Virus record (IMG/VR): IMGVR_UViG_3300010334_000023
Coordinates: 1 to 64,000 of that record
Length of the DNA: 64,000 bases
Direction: 5' to 3' (one strand)
The position numbers and the translations under genes are program-made. The notes below the pieces were generated by a model that made no database searches, was not told where the DNA came from, and was given only the letters and a program-made list of their open reading frames with translations. Shown here in pieces: positions 2,801-32,109 of this stretch. Every line of letters starts with the position of its first letter. Within the stretch, counting starts at the first letter, position 1.

Positions 2801-3298
2801 ATGTTAGACCTCGATACAGCCAAGAAACATGTCAGCACATGGATAGATACCGTGCTTACAGAACCCCAAGCTGAGCTCAACGGTATCAGCAGATGTCCTT
2901 TCGCAGCCACAGCGCTGGCCAAGGATCGAGTGGCCTGGGCACTGGGCTCAGACGTAGCATCTGACGTTGAGGCTGCCATAAACACCTGGCAGGACCACTC
3001 GGATATTGCTGTGATAGTTTATGATCCCAGCATTGACCCAGCGGCGTTTGCCACAGCTGTGGAATCTGCGAACCATCACATCTGCAAAGCCAGAAGCTTC
3101 GTCGCACTGGAGGATCATCCGGCGGTACCAGAACACGTGGCAGGACTGAGCATGAACCAAGGTCAGTATGCGTTGGTACTGCTAATGCCAGCTGCCAAGC
3201 TGCATCGTGCAAGCCAGATGTTGCGAGCCAGAGGCTATTATGACAACTGGAGCACAGAGGACATGGACGCTGTGGTTAATTGGAGATGGACATGCTGA
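2801..3298 (+). CDS. DUF1415-like protein
   Basis: WI...LNGISRCPFA motif and DHP; likely start is the ATG at 2801. Confidence 0.55.
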   Translation: MLDLDTAKKHVSTWIDTVLTEPQAELNGISRCPFAATALAKDRVAWALGSDVASDVEAAINTWQDHSDIAVIVYDPSIDPAAFATAVESANHHICKARSFVALEDHPAVPEHVAGLSMNQGQYALVLLMPAAKLHRASQMLRARGYYDNWSTEDMDAVVNWRWTC

Positions 3299-4428
3299 GC
3301 TCGCATCAACCCTGGGACACCCTGCGTGCATGCGCAGTTGGCATCAGCTATCCACCCGAATGGTACAGCTACATCGCCAACAGCCGTGTGCGCAAGGTCA
3401 TGGAGCGCATTGCTGTCGAGACCGAGGAAGACTACCAAAAGCTGATAGCCAAGCTCAGAGAGTTCAACGTTGATGTGGTGCGTCCTGTGCTGCCTCACAG
3501 CATGGAAGAGAGATTCCTGTCCATGGGCAGATACGCCATACCGCCCATGGTCCCCAGAGATCACATGGCCATGATCGGCAATAGGTTCTTCGCAGGACGC
3601 CAGGCTCAGACCAAGACCTATCTGGGTGCGCCCAGCGACTACATGAACATAGTCAACTACGTGGCTGAGCGAGGTAATAACATAGTCTGGGACAATCGTA
3701 TCAATGGCGCCATGGTCACTCGCATAGGCAGCGATATCTACATTGGCACCAACAACAGGCATCAATTCAGGTATACATATCTCGAGACTTGGCATCTAGA
3801 TCGAGAACCAACTTGGCCTGAGAAAGCACCACACGAATGGCACGAGCTCACAGTTGGGCAGCAGGAACAGTTCGTACACAACTATACTCGCAGGATCACT
3901 GACCTGTTCTCAGACTATCGCACTCACATAGTTGACACGCAGGGCCACACAGACGGGTCGTTCTCTCCGGTCTGCCCCGGGCTGATCGTGAGCTTGGTAG
4001 ATGTGCAGAACTATGCAGAGACCTTTCCTGGTTGGGAAGTGATATATCTACCAGAACAGAGCTGGAATGCCATAACTGATTTCACCAAACTCAAGCGCAA
4101 GAACAACGGAAAATGGTGGGTGCCGGGCGAGGAGCTCAATGACGACTTCACAGAGTTCGTTGAACTTTGGTTGAACCAGTGGGTTGGCTACGTGGAAGAA
4201 ACAGTGTTTGACGTGAACATGCTGGTCATAGATCGCAAGAACGTGCTGTGTAACAACTACAACAAAGCAGTGTTTGATGCTCTAGAGCGTCACGGCATGA
4301 CTCCTCACATCATCAACTTCCGACATCGCTATTTCTGGGACGGTGGCCTACACTGCATAACCAGCGACCTCGATCGCATCGGCGAACGACAGGACTGGTT
4401 CCCTGAAAGGTCGCAGAAGGCTATGTAG
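3280..4428 (+). CDS. amidinotransferase (glycine/inosamine-phosphate amidinotransferase family)
   Basis: W..L...VG, ETEED, PRD, GHTDG, FDVN.L, GGLHCIT catalytic Cys motif. Confidence 0.85.
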   Translation: MEMDMLSSHQPWDTLRACAVGISYPPEWYSYIANSRVRKVMERIAVETEEDYQKLIAKLREFNVDVVRPVLPHSMEERFLSMGRYAIPPMVPRDHMAMIGNRFFAGRQAQTKTYLGAPSDYMNIVNYVAERGNNIVWDNRINGAMVTRIGSDIYIGTNNRHQFRYTYLETWHLDREPTWPEKAPHEWHELTVGQQEQFVHNYTRRITDLFSDYRTHIVDTQGHTDGSFSPVCPGLIVSLVDVQNYAETFPGWEVIYLPEQSWNAITDFTKLKRKNNGKWWVPGEELNDDFTEFVELWLNQWVGYVEETVFDVNMLVIDRKNVLCNNYNKAVFDALERHGMTPHIINFRHRYFWDGGLHCITSDLDRIGERQDWFPERSQKAM

Positions 4429-22441: not shown

Positions 22442-23149
22442 ATGAGCGATCTCATAGTTACCAGCTATTTCACGGCCAAGAGCGATCGAGGCAAGGCCTT
22501 AGCTCCTCGTGATGATATCAGCTACATTGGATCTTGGTACCGCAGCGTGGTATCTCTGGGTTTGAACGGATTGATCCTGCATGATGGTCTCAGCGCAGAT
22601 TTCATGTCTGCTCACAGCACTGACAGGATCAGCTTCCAGTATCATGATAGCCATAGATGGAGCCCCAATGACGAGCGTTACATAGGGCTGTTGGATGTAT
22701 TAGAAACTACTTCTCATGATAGGATACTCCTGACCGATGGCAACGATGTCACGGTGAATCGCGATCCATTCGAGTTCATGACCGAACACAGGCTCTATTG
22801 CGGCACTGACATGCCCCAGGTTCATCGCCTGCGTGACAATGGCAGCTGCATGCAGAAGTGGCGCACGCTCAGACCATTGCTGGGTGTCAGTGATGAGGAA
22901 AGCGAACAATTCCTAGAGTTTGATCACGCGGCCGTGGGAATCTGCGGCGGACCCAGGGATCTCATGTTGTTACTGTTCAGATTGGTAGCCAGCGAGATGC
23001 GCAGGATCAACGACGATCGGAACCACAACTTCATGCTGATCAATTGGCTGCTGTGGAAGCACAGATTTTCGTTCTGGAAGGGTGCGCCATTTACCAGCCC
23101 GTTGTTTACCTTTGACAAATCCAGTGATTACTATCTCACTCACAAGTGA
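22442..23149 (+). CDS. putative glycosyltransferase-like protein
   Basis: NDERY, ILLTD..DV...RDPF, G..GG motifs; TAAATA upstream. Confidence 0.55.
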   Translation: MSDLIVTSYFTAKSDRGKALAPRDDISYIGSWYRSVVSLGLNGLILHDGLSADFMSAHSTDRISFQYHDSHRWSPNDERYIGLLDVLETTSHDRILLTDGNDVTVNRDPFEFMTEHRLYCGTDMPQVHRLRDNGSCMQKWRTLRPLLGVSDEESEQFLEFDHAAVGICGGPRDLMLLLFRLVASEMRRINDDRNHNFMLINWLLWKHRFSFWKGAPFTSPLFTFDKSSDYYLTHK

Positions 23150-25325: not shown

Positions 25326-25976
25326 TCACACAAGAGCCGGGTTCAGTACCGCCACTTTGATGTCACCTTTGGGGTAATTCTGCCTGTGAGCTGGCGGAGG
25401 AGTGATGCCCAATCGTTGGCACAGATGCAGGTTGTCCACCACGTCAAAGTCCACGTCTCGCTGTGCTGCGGCGTTGAGTATGCCGTTGTTCTGGAAATCT
25501 ATGTGCCACGCCATCCTGGTTAGGTCCTTGTACCAAACATAACTGGGATAGGTTATGTCAAACCCACCGCTGCGCATCCACCATCCCAGGCAGGCATCGT
25601 TGGATCTATGCACCATCACTATAGGGCAGTCGGGCCAGTTTACCTGCAGGAAGTCTATCTGAGTGGCGAACACATGGCTCTTGATTATCTTGATACCCCC
25701 ATTATTGCTGAAGATCCACGGGCGATCGAACTCAGCCTCGCATGCTTCCCTTGTATGCTGATCAAGCTGGTCGAACCAATCGCCAAATTCCATACCAGGA
25801 TCAAAATATGCGCCAAAGTGATTGAGTAGCTTGTTTCCGTTGCCGCTGCCAAAGTCGTAGTAGGTGCGATCTTCGCTGTAGTCTCCGCGATCTATGTCGG
25901 CGCCGTAGTAGATGTTCTTGACCACGCTGCTCCACTTGCTGCCGGGAGCGCCAGTGACGAATATGTATTTGGGCAT
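25326..25976 (-). CDS. P-loop/sulfotransferase-like protein (YIFVTGAPGSKWSSV)
   Basis: TGAPGS loop; IIKSH and VMVHR resemble sulfotransferase motifs. Confidence 0.6.
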   Translation of the reverse strand: MPKYIFVTGAPGSKWSSVVKNIYYGADIDRGDYSEDRTYYDFGSGNGNKLLNHFGAYFDPGMEFGDWFDQLDQHTREACEAEFDRPWIFSNNGGIKIIKSHVFATQIDFLQVNWPDCPIVMVHRSNDACLGWWMRSGGFDITYPSYVWYKDLTRMAWHIDFQNNGILNAAAQRDVDFDVVDNLHLCQRLGITPPPAHRQNYPKGDIKVAVLNPALV

Positions 25977-26179
25977 CAGACTCTCTTTATGGTACTGAGC
26001 CAAGCTCGCTCATGCAGATAGTATAGCATGATCTTGCTAAAGAACTCAACACCAGATATGGTCAATGCCAGCTGTGCTTGTCCAGTGACCCACCAACTCA
26101 CCACAAAGGTGTCAAGGGTACCCACTGCTCGCCAGCTGACAGCTTTGGCGATCAACAGCATGTCTCTGGAGATCTTCAT
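25976..26179 (-). CDS. DUF2061 small membrane protein
   Basis: KA.SWR..GT.DT...E...K...YY.HER.W. Confidence 0.85.
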   Translation of the reverse strand: MKISRDMLLIAKAVSWRAVGTLDTFVVSWWVTGQAQLALTISGVEFFSKIMLYYLHERAWLSTIKRV

Positions 26180-26859
26180 AGCGGGTAAATGGTGCCGTAG
26201 TTTGCGGCTGCCAACAGCTCACGTGTCTTGGCAGTCTTGCGTCCGGTTACCTGCAGGGCTGGACGTATCTTGCGGCTGGCATTGGCCGTGGCATGAGGCA
26301 CGTTAGGCCAATCAAACACATGCGCATCGCCTGCGCGCCACCTGTCATAGACCAAGTTGCCATACATGTAGAACTGTCCAGGTTCCCAGTCCTCTAGCAT
26401 CACCGTGAGCCTTATCACGTTGTCAGGTTCAGCATCCACGTCCCAGAGCTTGTCTATGTGCATGTTAAACATGTCACCCAGCTTCTGCACATGAACTCGT
26501 ATCTTTGGCTGCTCTATGGCAAAGAAATCAACCATCTTGCTGAGAACTGGATAGTCACTCAGCTGATCCCACATGTGAGTTATGGTCATCTTGGGATCAC
26601 CGCCTACCACAGCTATGTCTCTTTCCTCTTGGGCCAGCATGGGGCTATAACGCAGATCGTTTGGTCCGTAGAACTTGCGAGTCTCCCAGTTCATGGGCAG
26701 TGCTTTGGTCTTGATGTCGTCAATCTCAGCCTGCCAGTCCCCGGTAAATCTACCAAGCTTGGTGAACCAATCGCCCGGTCTGTCCTCGCGCCACTTGTCA
26801 AAATGGTAGTTGCTGCGCTCAACTGTCCAAGCCCAGCTGCTGTCATGTTCCTGTGTCAT
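26176..26859 (-). CDS. 2OG-Fe(II) oxygenase-like cupin protein
   Basis: H.Q..G.MFNMHID...W.AGD...FDW.N.PHATAN...R..LQ.TG. Confidence 0.7.
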   Translation of the reverse strand: MTQEHDSSWAWTVERSNYHFDKWREDRPGDWFTKLGRFTGDWQAEIDDIKTKALPMNWETRKFYGPNDLRYSPMLAQEERDIAVVGGDPKMTITHMWDQLSDYPVLSKMVDFFAIEQPKIRVHVQKLGDMFNMHIDKLWDVDAEPDNVIRLTVMLEDWEPGQFYMYGNLVYDRWRAGDAHVFDWPNVPHATANASRKIRPALQVTGRKTAKTRELLAAANYGTIYPL

Positions 26860-27866
26860 CTGTCTGTGTCTTTCTCTATGAACAATCTCTGTGCGTTCTT
26901 GTAGGCTATCTGCTCTGCCACATCAGCGTCAAGCTGTCCTAGTATCTCGCGCCAAGTGTCAATGATGATGTCATAGTGCTGCCAGCGCCAGTCCTTGTGG
27001 CAATCAGTGGCAAACAGCATGCGATCGGGCCACTTGGTCATGATGTGTCGCCACTGGTAATTTATCCTGCCATCGAGGTCTATCACCGGAGAACCCAGCT
27101 TGCTCTGTTTCTGCTTGCTGGTTGGTCCCGCGCCATTGGGCCAGAAACCTCGCCAAGTGTACCACCACCGCCCCACGTGTATGAGATCCTTCTTGCTCAG
27201 CAACAGATACACGTTGTCAAAGCGGTTAAGCAGCTCATTGCTGTAGACGGCACGTCCAAACCCACAGTGCGCGATCATAAAGTTGATGCGGGGGTATCGC
27301 TCGAACAGTGCGAAGAATCCAGGATGGTCTCGCTCCCAGTCATAGAACTCCCAGTGAAGCATCACCGGAATGCCCTTGCCGTCCAGTGCGTCCATGAGAT
27401 CAAGGAAGTTAGGCGACAAGGGATTGATGTAGCGTTCACCACGCAGCGTGGTTTCGTTGCCCCACTTGCCCGGATGCTTGTCGGCATGCACGCACTGCAG
27501 TTCGCCTATGAAGTGATAGAGGCCGCTGTCGCAGCCAGCTATGGCCTGCTCCACGAAACGCGCCCTGATATCATCCCTGTGATCAAAGCCTTTGGGTGCT
27601 CCCAGCACGAACATGTCAGGATATCGATTCTTGATATCTATCATGTGTTGCGTGCTGTCGTGTGGCTGCTGCTGCCTAGCAAAGATCATCATCTGGATGA
27701 CGTTGTGCTGGTGCATCTTGGCCACAACGTCCTCGCCGGATCTGGTAGCACTGAACTGCATCATGGCATCTATCAGAGGACCTTCATACTTCTTGCGCGG
27801 TCCACAGAAAAGACCGTTCAACTTGATCCTCAGATATTTCGCCGCGTTCTTGACGTCTGACCACAT
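26856..27866 (-). CDS. amidohydrolase_2/TatD-like TIM-barrel metallohydrolase
   Basis: LIDA, IGEL, PVMLH, IAHCG, PDRMLFATD, IAY.NA.RL. Confidence 0.75.
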   Translation of the reverse strand: MWSDVKNAAKYLRIKLNGLFCGPRKKYEGPLIDAMMQFSATRSGEDVVAKMHQHNVIQMMIFARQQQPHDSTQHMIDIKNRYPDMFVLGAPKGFDHRDDIRARFVEQAIAGCDSGLYHFIGELQCVHADKHPGKWGNETTLRGERYINPLSPNFLDLMDALDGKGIPVMLHWEFYDWERDHPGFFALFERYPRINFMIAHCGFGRAVYSNELLNRFDNVYLLLSKKDLIHVGRWWYTWRGFWPNGAGPTSKQKQSKLGSPVIDLDGRINYQWRHIMTKWPDRMLFATDCHKDWRWQHYDIIIDTWREILGQLDADVAEQIAYKNAQRLFIEKDTDR

Positions 27867-27888
27867 GTTAGCAGTTCCTATTTAAGGT

Positions 27889-29346
27889 TTATATAGCCAA
27901 GGCAGCTGGCCGCGGAGCAGTGAGATAGCTCACCACCACGTTGGCCGCCGCGCTGCCGATCACCTGCACTCCTGTGCCTATGACCATTATCACTGGTCCA
28001 CCACCGAACAGCAAACCATACACATAGATCGGGCTGCCAATGCAGATTCCAACGAATGCGCCAGCATAAAAGCCCCAGCGAGTGATGAAGTTGCGTGCCA
28101 GCAGTGCGATCACATAGTTGCCAGCCAGTGACAGTCCTATGGCCTTGCCAAACATGAAGAAAGTACCGATATCCAATCCGGGTATGTTTGCCATGGCGAT
28201 ACCAACCGCTGCCAGTATGAACATGGCAGCGAAACCCCAGCGCATTGGGTTGTCGGCCTTGGCCGCGTCGTGGAAATCATTGCTGCTGATGGTAGCACTG
28301 GTCATCAATATGGTATCGATCAAGCTAACCAAACCGCTGAAGACCACTGCTAGATACATCAGTGCCAACCAAGGGCCTACCACGGTGGCCATCATGATGA
28401 TGTTGATGAACTGTGTGTTTGGACCAGTGACACCAACATGCATGCCAGCAGCCAAGAATCCAAGACCGCCGCCAATGATAGGCAGTGGCAACCAATAAAA
28501 TGGAGCCAAGATGAAAGCAGGGATGATGGTGTTCTTTTTCTGGCTTAGAGCATTCTCATAGAACGCATGATCAGTCCATGGTCCCATGAAATGTCCTACC
28601 ACGGTTGGCACACCAAAGCCCATTAACACACCCAGGGCGAAGCTGTTGCCCCAGAGAGTGGTACCATTACCCGTGACGCCTCCCAGTCCTGCCCACACCG
28701 GCTCGAGACCAGTGGTTCCGAAAACCGTGATGGCTATGATAGCCATACCAATCCAGATAACACCAATCTTGACCATGTCAGTGATGAACGTAGCCTTGAT
28801 GCCGCCGCGCAAGGTATAAACCAGCGCTATGGCTACTAGGAACACGCTGGTGATCAGCGGGCTCAGCCCTGTCAAGAACTCCACGCTCTTGCTGCCCGCG
28901 AACAGGCTGAACGTGACCTGCTGCACAGTACTTACGGTTATCTGTGCAACTATGATGAACTGCACGATCTTGCCCAGACGTGTGCCCAGGAACTGGCTGA
29001 GTGTATAGCCATCTGGATACTTGTTGCGGAAGTAATTCACACCAAAAGCAAATATCATCAGCGTCAAGAAGTTACCGATGCTGAAATAGAACAGTCCAGT
29101 TAAACCATTGGTATATGCCTGTTGTGCTGCTACAAACAGCCCCGGAGCCTGTATCCATGCTGCTCCTGCTCCCATGCTGCCCTGCAGCCAGCCTATCTTG
29201 CGATTGGCCACAAGGAAGGATTCCTTGTCTTTGTTGTATCCCCTGCTGTACCAGCTGGTCACAGCAAATATGAACAGAGCATAGGCCGCAATGACAGTGA
29301 AACCTGTCATTGGACTGAACATTGGGAACATGTGCGCGATATCCAT
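27889..29346 (-). CDS. sodium:solute symporter (SSS family)
   Basis: About 13 hydrophobic segments, FLVANR, YTL.GG.KA...TD, S..D motifs. Confidence 0.85.
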   Translation of the reverse strand: MDIAHMFPMFSPMTGFTVIAAYALFIFAVTSWYSRGYNKDKESFLVANRKIGWLQGSMGAGAAWIQAPGLFVAAQQAYTNGLTGLFYFSIGNFLTLMIFAFGVNYFRNKYPDGYTLSQFLGTRLGKIVQFIIVAQITVSTVQQVTFSLFAGSKSVEFLTGLSPLITSVFLVAIALVYTLRGGIKATFITDMVKIGVIWIGMAIIAITVFGTTGLEPVWAGLGGVTGNGTTLWGNSFALGVLMGFGVPTVVGHFMGPWTDHAFYENALSQKKNTIIPAFILAPFYWLPLPIIGGGLGFLAAGMHVGVTGPNTQFINIIMMATVVGPWLALMYLAVVFSGLVSLIDTILMTSATISSNDFHDAAKADNPMRWGFAAMFILAAVGIAMANIPGLDIGTFFMFGKAIGLSLAGNYVIALLARNFITRWGFYAGAFVGICIGSPIYVYGLLFGGGPVIMVIGTGVQVIGSAAANVVVSYLTAPRPAALAI

Positions 29347-29429
29347 TCTTTTCTCCAGATTATTTGATCATCACCGAGATGATATATGCTATATATGTAA
29401 AAATATCGGCTCTAGTGGAAGAAATCAAT

Positions 29430-30203
29430 ATGAACAGAAGAATAAACGAGCATCTGGTGAAAAATCTCAAGGCCACGTTCAATTTAGAGCGCTGGCGCGA
29501 GATAAACGAGCAAATCAGCAGAGAAACGCTGCTGGAGAGACTGCCATGGACCAGCAAGCGCAGAGAGAAGTTCACTCAGATGCTAGCCAGCACCTTTGGT
29601 GTCGCTGCTGAGCTGCGCGGCACGGTGGCAGAACTGACCAACAGCCTGGATCAAGCCTACTGTGAGCATTTCTGGCAGAAAGTTTGGCAGCCGCGTACCG
29701 AGAATTACACCTATACTGGTTGGCAGGCAGTTGATGAGATACTGAGCAGGAATCCAAGGTCAGTGTTGGACGTTGGCTGCGGTTATAACCAGTTCAAGAC
29801 CAAGATACCAAACCTAGTCGGCATAGACAAGTACAACCCTGCTGCTGACTACATGGTCGACATCTTGGACTTTGATGTCGACCCTGAAAGCTATGATGCT
29901 GTCATGGTATTTGGTAGCATAAACTTTGGCGACTATGAGGATGTGGCCTGTAGGTTTGCCAAGGTCTTTGAGCTCACTGCGCCTGGTGGCAGGATATATG
30001 TACGAGCCAATCCCGGCTACAGCCACCCCACTGGCCCATGGATAGACATATTTGCCTGGGACTTTGCCACAGCTCATCGCGTGGCCAAGGACAACAATGC
30101 CACTATGTTGACGTTCAAGCATGACCAAGATCAGCCACAGGATAGCAGCGTTGATCCGGGTCACGGCCAAGGTAATCGTCTTTATTTTGTCTATGAGAAG
30201 TGA
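29430..30203 (+). CDS. class I SAM-dependent methyltransferase with N-terminal helical (ACP-like?) domain
   Basis: VLDVGCG, GID, YDAV..FGSINFG, PGGRI. Confidence 0.8.
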   Translation: MNRRINEHLVKNLKATFNLERWREINEQISRETLLERLPWTSKRREKFTQMLASTFGVAAELRGTVAELTNSLDQAYCEHFWQKVWQPRTENYTYTGWQAVDEILSRNPRSVLDVGCGYNQFKTKIPNLVGIDKYNPAADYMVDILDFDVDPESYDAVMVFGSINFGDYEDVACRFAKVFELTAPGGRIYVRANPGYSHPTGPWIDIFAWDFATAHRVAKDNNATMLTFKHDQDQPQDSSVDPGHGQGNRLYFVYEK

Positions 30204-30204
30204 G

Positions 30205-30535
30205 TGATGGGTTTATTCTGTTTCCAAGGAAACCCATCGAAAACTCATTGAGGTTACGCCGCTAGGCGAATCTCAGATGCAACGAAGTTGTCGTTTGCAG
30301 TTAGAAAATTGGACAATCCGGTTACCCGGAGGCGTGCCTAACCTGCTGACTCCTGCTACCCTTTACACGTCTGTCGATCCTATTTCGCCCCCATCAAAGA
30401 TACACACCTAAAGCTAGAATGCCTCATAGGGTCACGAAGCAACTAGGGACTTCAACCCTCGCATGTATCTATGGTGGAGGCGCCGGGTACCGCCCCCGGG
30501 TCCAGACCGCTTATTACGATGCTATCAACATCAAC
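30205..30535 (-). ncRNA. ssrA: circularly permuted two-piece tmRNA, tag ANDNFVASEIRLAA
   Basis: Acceptor piece ends GACCCGGGGGCGGTACCCGGCGCCTCCACCA (3' end at 30472); intervening segment about 80 nt; coding piece starts GGGGGCGAAATAGGATCGAC at 30392; tag ORF 30298-30254; terminal hairpin 30206-30238. Confidence 0.93.
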
Positions 30536-31155: not shown

Positions 31156-32109
31156 TTAGCGCGTCTTGACATGGCCGCCACCTGTCAGCGAGCCAACTAT
31201 AGGCTTGTCAGCTTCTGGAGGTATGTCCCAGGCACGGCCCACGAACTTTCTGTATCGATAGTTGTTTAAGAAGTTAGTCTCTGTGAGGTCATGCCCTTGG
31301 TTGCCACCTAGCAGACGCACTCTTCCGGAACTTGGATCAACACCTCGCACAAATGCCACGTGATGGTTTCTGCCGTTCTCGCTGACGAAGATATCATTTC
31401 TACGCCACTGCGTTGGATCATTTATAGATATGGCTTTGGCTCCGCATTTACGTACCCAGTCAGTGGCATAGCTGTCAGCTGTTGCCGTTTTTAGAGCTGG
31501 TATACCCAGCGATTGTAGCACAGTACCAACAAAAGCAGCACACCATGGACACTTATCACCTGGTTCGATTCTCTTGGCATTGGCTATACCAATGGTGTGA
31601 GCATAGCAGTTGAGTATGTTGGGATTGCCGGGTTCAGTCCGCGTCGCTTTCCATTTGCCAGCTTCTCCTTCTGCTTTCAACTGATTGAGATAGCTTTCCA
31701 ACGAGCCCCACAGACCAGCAGCACCACTAGGCGGAGGTGTCACTCCAGATGATATTGGTTCCGGATCACCTGCATGGTCATTTGGATCGCTTGTGCGAGG
31801 TCCAGGAGGAGGAGCTTCTGCTTGTTTTGTTATCGTACCATCATCATTTTCAAGTTCATCTGGATTTGCGTCTGCATATGCCTGGGCAGCCTTATAGTTT
31901 TTGATCTGTTCTGGATTTGGGGCATAATCAGCAACTGGTGGTGGCACTGGTATGTTCAGTGCGGTGAGAAAGCTATTACCAAGCTGGGGCGGTAACCATA
32001 GTGCTGCCTGTACATTGTTGATGAACACGTTTGGGCTATAGTAAACGTCTTCAACACCTGCATCTATGAGGTCCAGTGCCTGTGGAAATCCGCGAGGTAG
32101 GTAAGGCAT
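31156..32109 (-). CDS. TIGR02594/CHAP-domain protein, probably a virion-associated lysin
   Basis: VYYSPNVFIN N-terminus, PWCAAFV, HVAF, LGGNQ. Confidence 0.75.
   Translation of the reverse strand: MPYLPRGFPQALDLIDAGVEDVYYSPNVFINNVQAALWLPPQLGNSFLTALNIPVPPPVADYAPNPEQIKNYKAAQAYADANPDELENDDGTITKQAEAPPPGPRTSDPNDHAGDPEPISSGVTPPPSGAAGLWGSLESYLNQLKAEGEAGKWKATRTEPGNPNILNCYAHTIGIANAKRIEPGDKCPWCAAFVGTVLQSLGIPALKTATADSYATDWVRKCGAKAISINDPTQWRRNDIFVSENGRNHHVAFVRGVDPSSGRVRLLGGNQGHDLTETNFLNNYRYRKFVGRAWDIPPEADKPIVGSLTGGGHVKTR

What the first reader, a model, noticed from the sequence alone, without database searches (positions are those of the whole stretch)
25326..30203. Candidate undescribed uptake-and-modify pathway: SSS transporter, amidohydrolase, oxygenase, DUF2061, sulfotransferase-like protein and divergent methyltransferase
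Seen: five co-oriented genes, the last four overlapping at start/stop, plus a divergent methyltransferase sharing an 83-nt spacer. A full multi-TM sodium:solute symporter is unusual in a phage. Inference: the phage imports a small molecule and then hydrolyses, hydroxylates, methylates and transfers it, for DNA/virion modification or nutrient scavenging. The substrate cannot be read from the sequence.
Basis: partly seen in the sequence, partly recalled or inferred. Interest (0 to 1): 0.75.

Follow-up and report, generated by a model that had tools for sequence, protein, structure and literature searches.

The report
Phage transporter-linked sulfation-type gene cassette
A giant freshwater phage carries a membrane transporter that, across hundreds of uncultured phages, stays linked to sulfotransferase-like enzymes, a methyltransferase and an oxygenase; this looks like an undescribed viral pathway for sulfating and tailoring a still unknown target, probably a sugar chain.

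Summary
The gene layout is exactly as described. The window is the first 64 kb of a 216-kb record of a jumbo T4-like phage from lake metagenomes. The transporter belongs to one phage-only clade of sodium:solute symporters, with 457 matches in IMG/VR. In 84 loci it is linked to a methyltransferase (76), a sulfotransferase-like family that this locus lacks (77), a 2OG-Fe(II) oxygenase (47) and the window's sulfotransferase-fold protein (38). In 25 loci an APS-kinase-like gene and a small NMNAT-like nucleotidyltransferase follow it directly. This phage keeps those two genes 135 kb away. Its copy of the missing sulfotransferase-like family sits inside a glycosyltransferase operon. The amidohydrolase is a lineage-specific insert, not part of the conserved set. 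Best reading (about 0.5): a PAPS-type sulfation and tailoring cassette, probably acting on a glycan, with the transporter supplying sulfate or a precursor. The substrate is not known. I found no description of this cassette. It is a new variant of a known kind.

The parts
27889..29346 (-). Sodium:solute symporter family transporter (485 aa), member of a phage-only clade; substrate unknown
   Evidence: PF00474 49 bits, cut-off 22.8. phrog_20720 E 6e-57. Multiple hydropathy peaks. The nearest solved structure is the DUR3 urea-H+ symporter, E 2e-43. 82 viral sequences form one clade with SH-aLRT 100.
26856..27866 (-). Divergent Amidohydro_2 (TIM-barrel hydrolase/decarboxylase superfamily) protein; a lineage-specific insert, not part of the conserved cassette
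   Evidence: PF04909 40.4 bits. It is a singleton among 85 SSS loci. Its homologues lie in other contexts. The strand-1 HxH motif is replaced by IDAMMQ. The only PDB hit is 3cjp, E 2e-4.
26176..26859 (-). 2OG-Fe(II) dioxygenase (double-stranded beta-helix), the 'downstream' paralogue of the cassette's oxygenase family
25976..26179 (-). DUF2061 small membrane protein, always directly upstream of the sulfotransferase-like gene in phages
   Evidence: PF09834 72.5 bits. The same position is seen in L051 and L015. Bacterial relatives lie in cysI/H/D/N and cysK/J/I operons and in a nodH/nodPQ locus. None of 30 Pseudomonadota loci shows this.
25326..25976 (-). Sulfotransferase-fold protein (216 aa) with a non-canonical P-loop, GAPGSKWSS
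29430..30203 (+). Class I SAM-dependent methyltransferase-like protein (257 aa), divergently transcribed
   Evidence: Motif I DVGCGYN is conserved. The profile hits cyclopropane-fatty-acid synthase (E 1e-4) and TehB (E 2e-3). The Pfam match is below cut-off. The family is present in 76 of 84 SSS loci.
29347..29429 (.). 83-nt A+T-rich divergent intergenic spacer between the SSS and the methyltransferase
   Evidence: Sequence read directly. No sigma-70-like site was found there.

Best explanation
This locus is one rearranged copy of a conserved phage cassette for sulfate-type group activation and transfer plus tailoring. The cassette is built around a phage-specific SSS transporter. In its fullest form (for example L009) it is one translationally coupled operon: 2OG oxygenase, SSS, APS-kinase-like kinase, small NMNAT-like adenylyltransferase, sulfotransferase-like family C, sulfotransferase-like family S, methyltransferase.

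Proposed working (inferred, not shown): the transporter brings in sulfate, or another small polar precursor. The nucleotidyltransferase and the APS-kinase-like enzyme make or top up a 3'-phosphoadenylyl donor, PAPS or a PAPS-like compound. The two sulfotransferase-fold enzymes pass the group to an acceptor. The methyltransferase and the oxygenase also modify that acceptor.

In this phage the kinase and nucleotidyltransferase lie 135 kb away, next to thyX. Family C lies inside a glycosyltransferase operon, so the acceptor is most likely a glycan. That glycan could be on the host envelope, on the virion, or conceivably on DNA. The amidohydrolase occupies the slot that family C holds in L051 and is an add-on of this lineage.

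Shown: the gene families, the folds, the linkage, and the presence of the minus-strand genes in a lake RNA library. Inferred: the donor, the acceptor and the transported substrate.
For: Linkage. 457 IMG/VR matches. In 84 loci, family C occurs in 77, the methyltransferase in 76, the oxygenase in 47 and family S in 38. The APS-kinase-like gene (25 loci, at +1 in 23) and the nucleotidyltransferase (25 loci, at +2 in 23) follow the transporter. These links hold in 3 to 5 of 6 transporter clusters defined at 60% identity and in all three subclades of one viral clade. In L009 the genes overlap by 4-8 nt.

Folds. Family S is a sulfotransferase fold. Family C resembles sulfotransferases by Atlas features. 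The kinase profile hits APS kinases at E 1e-10 to 1e-11 and keeps the LGFS..DR..RR stretch.

Own genome. The kinase and nucleotidyltransferase are at 163866-165141. Family C is at 105333-106022, overlapping three glycosyltransferase genes. Both SSS-bearing records that are at least 90% complete also carry the kinase.

Sulfur context elsewhere. Two of the two nearest bacterial DUF2061 genes examined lie in cys operons, and one sits in a nodH/nodPQ locus. The related Bacillota prophage transporters are followed by two PAPS-reductase-family genes.

Expression hint. Lake metatranscriptome contigs at 100% identity cover the sulfotransferase-like gene, the oxygenase, the amidohydrolase and the SSS.
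Against: No sulfotransferase-like member reaches Pfam's cut-off. Both P-loops are non-canonical (PGSKWS and GPQGSGNH in place of PKSGTT/PRSGTT).

The 216 kb held contain no ATP sulfurylase, CysD/CysH or CysQ. The nucleotidyltransferase looks like NadM-type NMNAT and not like a sulfurylase. The kinase has NAD where APS kinases have DGD.

The transporter's nearest characterised relatives carry urea, choline or sugars, not sulfate. No SSS member is known to me to carry sulfate.

The kinase and nucleotidyltransferase are adjacent in only 25 of 84 loci. Here they lie beside thyX, which would also fit nucleotide metabolism.

The DUF2061-sulfur link is absent in 30 of 30 Pseudomonadota loci, where the neighbours are redox-stress genes.

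Many of the 84 loci are close kin. DNA carry-over into the RNA library is not excluded.
Confidence: 0.5

Rival explanations
1. A Lic-like decoration pathway without sulfate. The transporter imports a small polar head group. The P-loop kinase phosphorylates it and the small cytidylyltransferase-superfamily enzyme makes a nucleotide-activated form. The P-loop transferase-like proteins then attach it to a glycan. The methyltransferase and oxygenase tailor it.
For: The gene order transporter, kinase, nucleotidyltransferase, transferases mirrors the licB/licA/licC/licD logic known from the literature. The nucleotidyltransferase has HxGH and ISxTxxR motifs and is 121-129 aa long. The choline transporter CHT1 is the second-best solved relative of the SSS. 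Family C sits among glycosyltransferases.
Against: The kinase is specifically APS-kinase-like and keeps the adenine-nucleotide-binding stretch. It is not a choline or sugar kinase. The transferases have the sulfotransferase fold, not a LicD or glycosyltransferase fold. The nucleotidyltransferase's best matches are adenylyltransferases (NMNAT).
Confidence: 0.15
2. A nucleotide, cofactor or DNA-modification module. The transporter salvages a nucleobase, nucleoside or vitamin such as a nicotinamide derivative. The kinase and the NMNAT-like enzyme rebuild a dinucleotide such as NAD+. Alternatively, the oxygenase, the amidohydrolase (as a decarboxylase) and the methyltransferase modify bases, as in thymine-7-hydroxylase/iso-orotate decarboxylase chemistry or phage DNA hypermodification.
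For: The NMNAT-type profile hit has E 3e-6. The locus abuts topoisomerase II. The kinase and nucleotidyltransferase abut thyX. Amidohydrolase relatives sit beside ribonucleotide reductase, and in a marine virus near thyX. The amidohydrolase and oxygenase are translationally coupled here. Cellular relatives of the transporter occur in CPR and DPANN genomes, which depend on salvage (my own knowledge).
Against: No TGT/DpdA, QueC or ThyA-like hydroxymethylase was found in the 216 kb. The most constant partners are two sulfotransferase-like families and a small-molecule-type methyltransferase. The amidohydrolase is not conserved with the cassette. The nucleotidyltransferase lacks the C-terminal part of NMNATs: it is 121-129 aa, against 168-181 aa for the single-domain solved NMNAT chains. 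The oxygenase resembles prolyl and aspartyl hydroxylases, not TET/JBP.
Confidence: 0.12
3. The transporter is a stand-alone nutrient-scavenging or host-takeover gene, for example for uptake of urea or polyamines, or for membrane effects. Its neighbours are unrelated accessory genes that happen to share a variable genome region.
For: DUR3 is the nearest solved homologue. Automatic source names call relatives urea-proton or proline symporters. The region is mosaic: the amidohydrolase insert, the relocated family C and kinase, and duplicated methyltransferase and sulfotransferase-like paralogues in L003.
Against: The same families recur beside the transporter over 36-100% transporter identity, often with overlapping stop and start codons. 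The viral clade lies far from eukaryotic DUR3 in the tree. PutP and PanF equivalog scores are far below their cut-offs.
Confidence: 0.1

Closest known systems
NodP/NodQ/NodH (rhizobial Nod-factor sulfation) and RaxP/RaxQ/RaxST (Xanthomonas peptide sulfation)
   Same: A dedicated PAPS supply (APS kinase) is encoded together with a sulfotransferase that decorates a glycan or peptide. DUF2061 accompanies nodH/nodPQ in Mesorhizobium. The fold of the window's sulfotransferase-like protein is closest to tyrosylprotein sulfotransferases.
   Different: No CysD/CysN-type or Sat-type ATP sulfurylase was found. An NMNAT-like mini nucleotidyltransferase stands in that position. An SSS transporter, a 2OG oxygenase and a methyltransferase are core parts. 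The system is encoded by lytic-type jumbo and T4-like phages.
Viral cysC and sulfotransferase 'auxiliary metabolic genes' listed in virome surveys
   Same: APS kinase and sulfotransferase genes on viral contigs. Adenylylsulfate kinase appears together with auxiliary metabolic genes in several virome papers found.
   Different: Those surveys list single genes and treat them as sulfur assimilation. In four searches I found no description of a conserved operon with a transporter, two sulfotransferase-like families, a methyltransferase and an oxygenase.
DUR3 urea-H+ symporter (SSS family, TC 2.A.21)
   Same: It is the best solved-structure match of the transporter profile: E 2e-43 against 4e-22 for the next family.
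   Different: Identity is about 25% over about half the length. The eukaryotic DUR3 sequences are separated from the viral clade by very long branches. The substrate cannot be transferred from DUR3.
LicABCD phosphocholine decoration pathway
   Same: The logic and gene order: transporter, kinase, nucleotidyltransferase, transferase, acting on a surface glycan.
   Different: All four enzyme families differ: an APS-kinase-like kinase instead of a choline kinase, an NMNAT-like enzyme instead of a LicC fold, and a sulfotransferase fold instead of LicD.

Membership tests
Sodium:solute symporter family (Pfam PF00474 / TC 2.A.21) | Full-length match to the family model above the curated threshold | tested here: met
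   PF00474 49.1 bits against a cut-off of 22.8, covering model positions 1-406. The NCBIfam superfamily model TIGR00813 scores 71 bits, below its cut-off of 184.
Sodium:solute symporter family (Pfam PF00474 / TC 2.A.21) | Orthology to a characterised subfamily (PutP, PanF, DUR3) that would give the substrate | tested here: not met
   PutP scores 31 against 515 and PanF 22.6 against 328. DUR3 is the best solved match but lies across very long branches, and the viral sequences form their own clade.
PAPS-dependent sulfotransferases | Sulfotransferase fold | tested here: met
PAPS-dependent sulfotransferases | Sequence-family membership (Pfam Sulfotransfer_1/_3 above threshold) and a canonical 5'-PSB loop (PKSGTT/PRSGTT) | tested here: not met
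   The window protein has no Pfam hit. 9 of 22 relatives hit Sulfotransfer_3 below the cut-off, best E 2.8e-4. The loop reads GAPGSKWSS. K99, H101 and R124 are invariant.
PAPS-dependent sulfotransferases | PAPS binding and sulfuryl transfer | not testable with these tools
   This needs biochemistry.
APS kinase (CysC; gene outside the window, G000 163866-164339) | Match to PF01583 above threshold and the APS-binding motifs | tested here: inconclusive
   55.1 bits against 21.1, but only model positions 5-91 of 152 are covered. The profile hits solved APS kinases at E 1e-10 to 1e-11. LGFS..DR..RR is kept, while DGD is NAD.
Complete sulfate-activation system (ATP sulfurylase plus APS kinase) | An ATP sulfurylase (Sat, PF01747, or CysD, PF01507) | tested here: not met
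   None found in the 216 kb held, which is 42% of the genome. The partner gene is NMNAT-like.
2OG-Fe(II) dioxygenases | Double-stranded beta-helix fold with an HxD...H triad and a 2OG-binding Arg | tested here: met
Amidohydro_2 (PF04909; ACMSD/LigI/IDCase-type) | Family model above threshold | tested here: met
   40.4 bits against 26.4, covering only residues 146-329.
Amidohydro_2 (PF04909; ACMSD/LigI/IDCase-type) | Strand-1 HxH metal-binding pair | tested here: not met
   The family reads IDAMMQ with D33, M35 and Q37 invariant. H171, H200 and D288 are kept.
Class I SAM-dependent methyltransferases | Motif I (D/E-x-G-x-G-x-G-like) and a family-model match | tested here: inconclusive
   DVGCGYN is conserved. 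Pfam Methyltransf_25 scores 17.6, below 27. The profile hits CFA synthase at E 1e-4.
DUF2061 (PF09834) | Family model above threshold | tested here: met
   72.5 bits against 23.1.

The most novel reading that the evidence does not exclude
The cassette is a self-contained viral route from outside the cell to a sulfated product, built from non-canonical parts. An SSS-family transporter would import sulfate or another sulfur oxyanion, a substrate I do not know to be carried by any member of this family. A 121-129-aa NMNAT-like enzyme would act as a minimal ATP sulfurylase. A divergent APS kinase would make PAPS. Two unusual sulfotransferase families would then sulfate a phage-made or host glycan.
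Probability: 0.2. Interest if true: 0.85.

Novelty: new variant of a known kind. Interest (0 to 1): 0.62.

Why it matters
If the cassette works as proposed, large freshwater and marine phages would carry their own machinery to take up a precursor, activate it and sulfate, methylate and hydroxylate a target during infection. That would add a new class of virus-directed surface or virion modification. It would also assign functions to several large 'hypothetical' viral protein families; one Atlas neighbour cluster of family C alone has 9,886 members. It might reveal a new substrate class for SSS transporters and a new kind of sulfate-activating enzyme. In addition, it gives a concrete, testable operon for viral 'sulfur' auxiliary genes, which surveys so far list only one by one.

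Tried and rejected
- Megablast of the locus against 50,697 phage records found nothing.
- tblastn of each protein found only one gut phage contig and 'Marine virus AG-345-D19' fragments.
- A 7-deazaguanine or hydroxymethyl-pyrimidine DNA modification was considered, because of the Amidohydro_2 plus methyltransferase pair and the PAPS-reductase/ParB neighbours in prophages. No TGT, QueC or ThyA-like gene lies in the 216 kb.
- A TauD/AtsK-type sulfate-releasing oxygenase was considered after a weak AtsK hit (E 0.008). The fold searches favour prolyl and aspartyl hydroxylase types.
- A profile-profile comparison of the two sulfotransferase-like families aligned only the P-loop, probability 12%.
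- Complex prediction of SSS, sulfotransferase-like protein and DUF2061 gave 'no answer'. This is not evidence either way.
- DUF2061 as a general marker of sulfate assimilation was rejected. 0 of 30 Pseudomonadota loci have cys neighbours, and their neighbours are LysR regulators, peroxidases and disulfide oxidoreductases.
- The nucleotidyltransferase family gave only one weak match (E 1e-8) in 401 Pseudomonadota genomes, so no cellular context could be read.
- The cellular contexts of transporter relatives were too varied to give a substrate: AsnB-like plus TPR plus Toprim, TrmB, and YcaO.
- PADLOC gave nothing telling.
- No sigma-70-like promoter was found in the spacer.
- The literature searches found no description of the cassette.


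Full report
WHAT IS THERE. The window is the first 64 kb of a 216,498-bp IMG/VR virus record that CheckV rates 42% complete. Its topoisomerase II large subunit is 55% identical to that of Sinorhizobium phage Phosso and 51% identical to that of Agrobacterium phage Atu_ph07, both jumbo phages of 470-490 kb. A 492,753-bp metagenome contig carries a 91%-identical copy of the amidohydrolase. DNA runs holding the locus are freshwater and lake metagenomes.

The junctions are as described: ATGA overlaps at amidohydrolase/oxygenase and at oxygenase/DUF2061, a TGATG overlap at DUF2061/sulfotransferase-like, 22 nt between SSS and amidohydrolase, and an 83-nt spacer to the divergent methyltransferase. The topoisomerase gene follows 27 nt downstream on the same strand.

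WHAT EACH GENE IS.
- The transporter is a full-length SSS-family protein (PF00474; phrog_20720).
- The 'oxygenase' has no Pfam hit, but it models confidently (pLDDT 87) as a 2OG-Fe(II) dioxygenase. It is closest to prolyl, aspartyl and PHD-type hydroxylases. It has an invariant HxD...H triad and an invariant Arg.
- The methyltransferase has a class I motif I and weak profile hits.
- DUF2061 is a clear family member.
- The amidohydrolase passes the PF04909 threshold. Its whole family lacks the strand-1 HxH pair and has no characterised close relative.

CONSERVED LINKAGE. A close-relative scan showed first that loci with 88-90%-identical transporters lack the amidohydrolase and DUF2061. Those loci have an oxygenase upstream of the transporter, two methyltransferase paralogues and extra P-loop proteins. 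Distant transporter homologues (48-56% identity) on phage contigs of 150-345 kb are followed directly by an APS-kinase-like gene, a 121-122-aa ORF and ~210-aa ORFs.

An alignment-based scan found 457 matches in IMG/VR. I clustered all ORFs of 85 loci (84 with the transporter called) and counted partners:
- a ~213-aa P-loop family ('C', GPQGSGNH) in 77 loci;
- the methyltransferase family in 76;
- the oxygenase family in 47;
- the window's sulfotransferase-like family ('S') in 38;
- the APS-kinase-like gene in 25, at +1 in 23 of them;
- the small nucleotidyltransferase in 25, at +2 in 23 of them.

Many loci are truncated, so these counts are lower bounds. Many loci are also kin, so I counted clusters as well: the links hold in 3-5 of 6 transporter clusters at 60% identity. 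In a tree, 82 viral transporters form one clade (SH-aLRT 100, long stem), and all three of its subclades carry C and the methyltransferase. The window's amidohydrolase is a singleton in this set. Its relatives lie next to ribonucleotide reductase, next to other accessory genes, or in a bacterial curli locus at 73% identity.

THE MISSING PARTS ARE ELSEWHERE IN THIS GENOME. The APS-kinase-like gene is 75% identical to L011's copy, and the nucleotidyltransferase is 66% identical to L011's. Both lie at G000 163866-165141, separated by a 139-aa ORF and flanked by thyX and two radical SAM/SPASM genes. Family C lies at 105333-106022, overlapping start-to-stop with three glycosyltransferase genes: Mannosyl_trans3, GT92/GT2 and GT4.

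L051 has the order SSS, C, oxygenase, DUF2061, S. Its oxygenase is 78% identical and its DUF2061 64% identical to the window's copies. The window therefore differs from L051 by having the amidohydrolase where L051 has C.

THE ACTIVATION PAIR. The kinase profile hits solved APS kinases at E 1e-10 to 1e-11. It keeps the LGFS..DR..RR stretch that binds APS in those enzymes, but has NAD in place of DGD. The nucleotidyltransferase has GRxQPWHxGH and ISATKIR motifs, and its best solved matches are NadM-type NMN adenylyltransferases (E 3e-6). It is only 121-129 aa long. I found no ATP sulfurylase, CysD/H or CysQ in the 216 kb.

An adenylyltransferase paired with a 3'-kinase, and followed by sulfotransferase-fold enzymes, fits a scheme that makes a 3'-phosphoadenylyl donor and then transfers the group. 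Whether the donor is PAPS itself is not shown.

THE TRANSPORTER'S SUBSTRATE. The profile's best solved match is the DUR3 urea-H+ symporter (E 2e-43). CHT1 and the SGLTs follow at E 1e-22 to 1e-20. PutP and PanF models score far below their cut-offs. In the tree, eukaryotic DUR3 is very distant.

Cellular relatives at 27-35% identity occur in many phyla, including CPR and DPANN. Their contexts differ:
- Bacillota prophages: transporter, two PAPS-reductase-family genes, ParB, small terminase;
- seven taxonomic groups: Toprim/Top6A-like, TPR, asparagine-synthase-like, transporter;
- CPR, DPANN and others: a divergent TrmB regulator.

None of these contexts gives a substrate.

DUF2061. In phages it always sits directly upstream of family S (window, L051, L015). 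I examined two of its nearest bacterial relatives, chosen only for contig length. One lies between cysI and siroheme synthase, with cysJ and cysK nearby. The other overlaps the stop of cysN, after cysI-cysH-cysD. A preprint places DUF2061 in a nodH/nodPQ nod locus. Against this, none of 30 Pseudomonadota DUF2061 loci has a cys or APS-kinase neighbour within 1.5 kb. Those sampled have LysR regulators, peroxidases and disulfide oxidoreductases, and papers list the gene as iron/Fur-regulated. The sulfur link therefore holds for some lineages only and is weak support.

EXPRESSION. One lake metatranscriptome holds 100%-identical contigs over the sulfotransferase-like gene, the oxygenase, the amidohydrolase, the amidohydrolase/SSS junction and most of the SSS. 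It holds none over the methyltransferase body (29484-30056). These are assembler contigs from an RNA library. DNA carry-over is not excluded, and no strand is given.

VERDICT. The best reading is a sulfation-type activation, transfer and tailoring cassette built around a phage-specific SSS transporter, probably acting on a glycan (confidence about 0.5). The main rivals are a Lic-like non-sulfate decoration pathway, a nucleotide/cofactor/DNA-modification module, and a stand-alone scavenging transporter. The amidohydrolase is an add-on of this lineage. I found no published description of the cassette. It ranks as a new variant of known sulfation systems, with a 0.2 chance of the more novel reading: an SSS sulfate importer plus a minimal sulfurylase.

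Noticed in passing
window 30372-30503: The intergenic stretch between the methyltransferase and the next ORF shows many loose read ends, 2-5 times higher contig depth, and in one lake sample a 79-nt segment replaced by 28 other letters. It looks like a short repeat or a hot spot for rearrangement.
   Followed up: no
window 3280-4428 (+): An ORF 33% identical to a ~360-aa family that sits beside the transporter in 11 other phage loci. That family gives a weak arginine-deiminase (guanidino-modifying fold) Pfam hit. It may be a further, dispersed cassette member.
   Followed up: partly
G000 160246-162743 (outside the window; L183 2746-5243): Two radical SAM/SPASM genes lie just upstream of thyX and the kinase/nucleotidyltransferase pair. 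The same radical SAM family lies near the transporter in 10 other loci.
   Followed up: partly
L114, L131, L136 and about 20 other Bacillota loci; L018: Prophage-type relatives of the transporter are followed by two PAPS-reductase-family genes, a ParB-like gene and the small terminase. This is a second, different transporter-plus-'sulfur nucleotide' linkage of unknown function.
   Followed up: partly
L107, L109, L113, L115, L122, L129, L141, L162: A four-gene set (Top6A/Spo11-type Toprim protein, TPR protein, asparagine-synthase-like amidotransferase, SSS transporter) recurs in seven taxonomic groups (Clostridia, Proteobacteria, Phycisphaeraceae, Spirochaetota, Electrothrix, Armatimonadia, Caldilineaceae). 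Its function is unknown.
   Followed up: no
L100 6798-7793: A homologue 73% identical to the phage amidohydrolase lies in what looks like a bacterial locus with curli genes csgF/csgG. This suggests recent exchange with a possible host lineage.
   Followed up: no
L002 (MH319720.1 5000-22000): A marine single-cell-derived virus contig has a family S homologue, an Amidohydro_2 homologue and thyX within 5 kb, without the transporter.
   Followed up: partly
window 31156-32109 (-) and 22442-23149 (+): Flanking genes: a CHAP-domain protein with similarity to the tail lysozyme / baseplate hub, and a 235-aa ORF with a weak glycosyltransferase PHROG hit.
   Followed up: no
L003 5663-7185 and 10080-11338: The closest relatives carry tandem paralogues of the methyltransferase (59% and 44% identical to the window's) and of family S (71% and 46%). 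The cassette therefore diversifies by duplication.
   Followed up: partly
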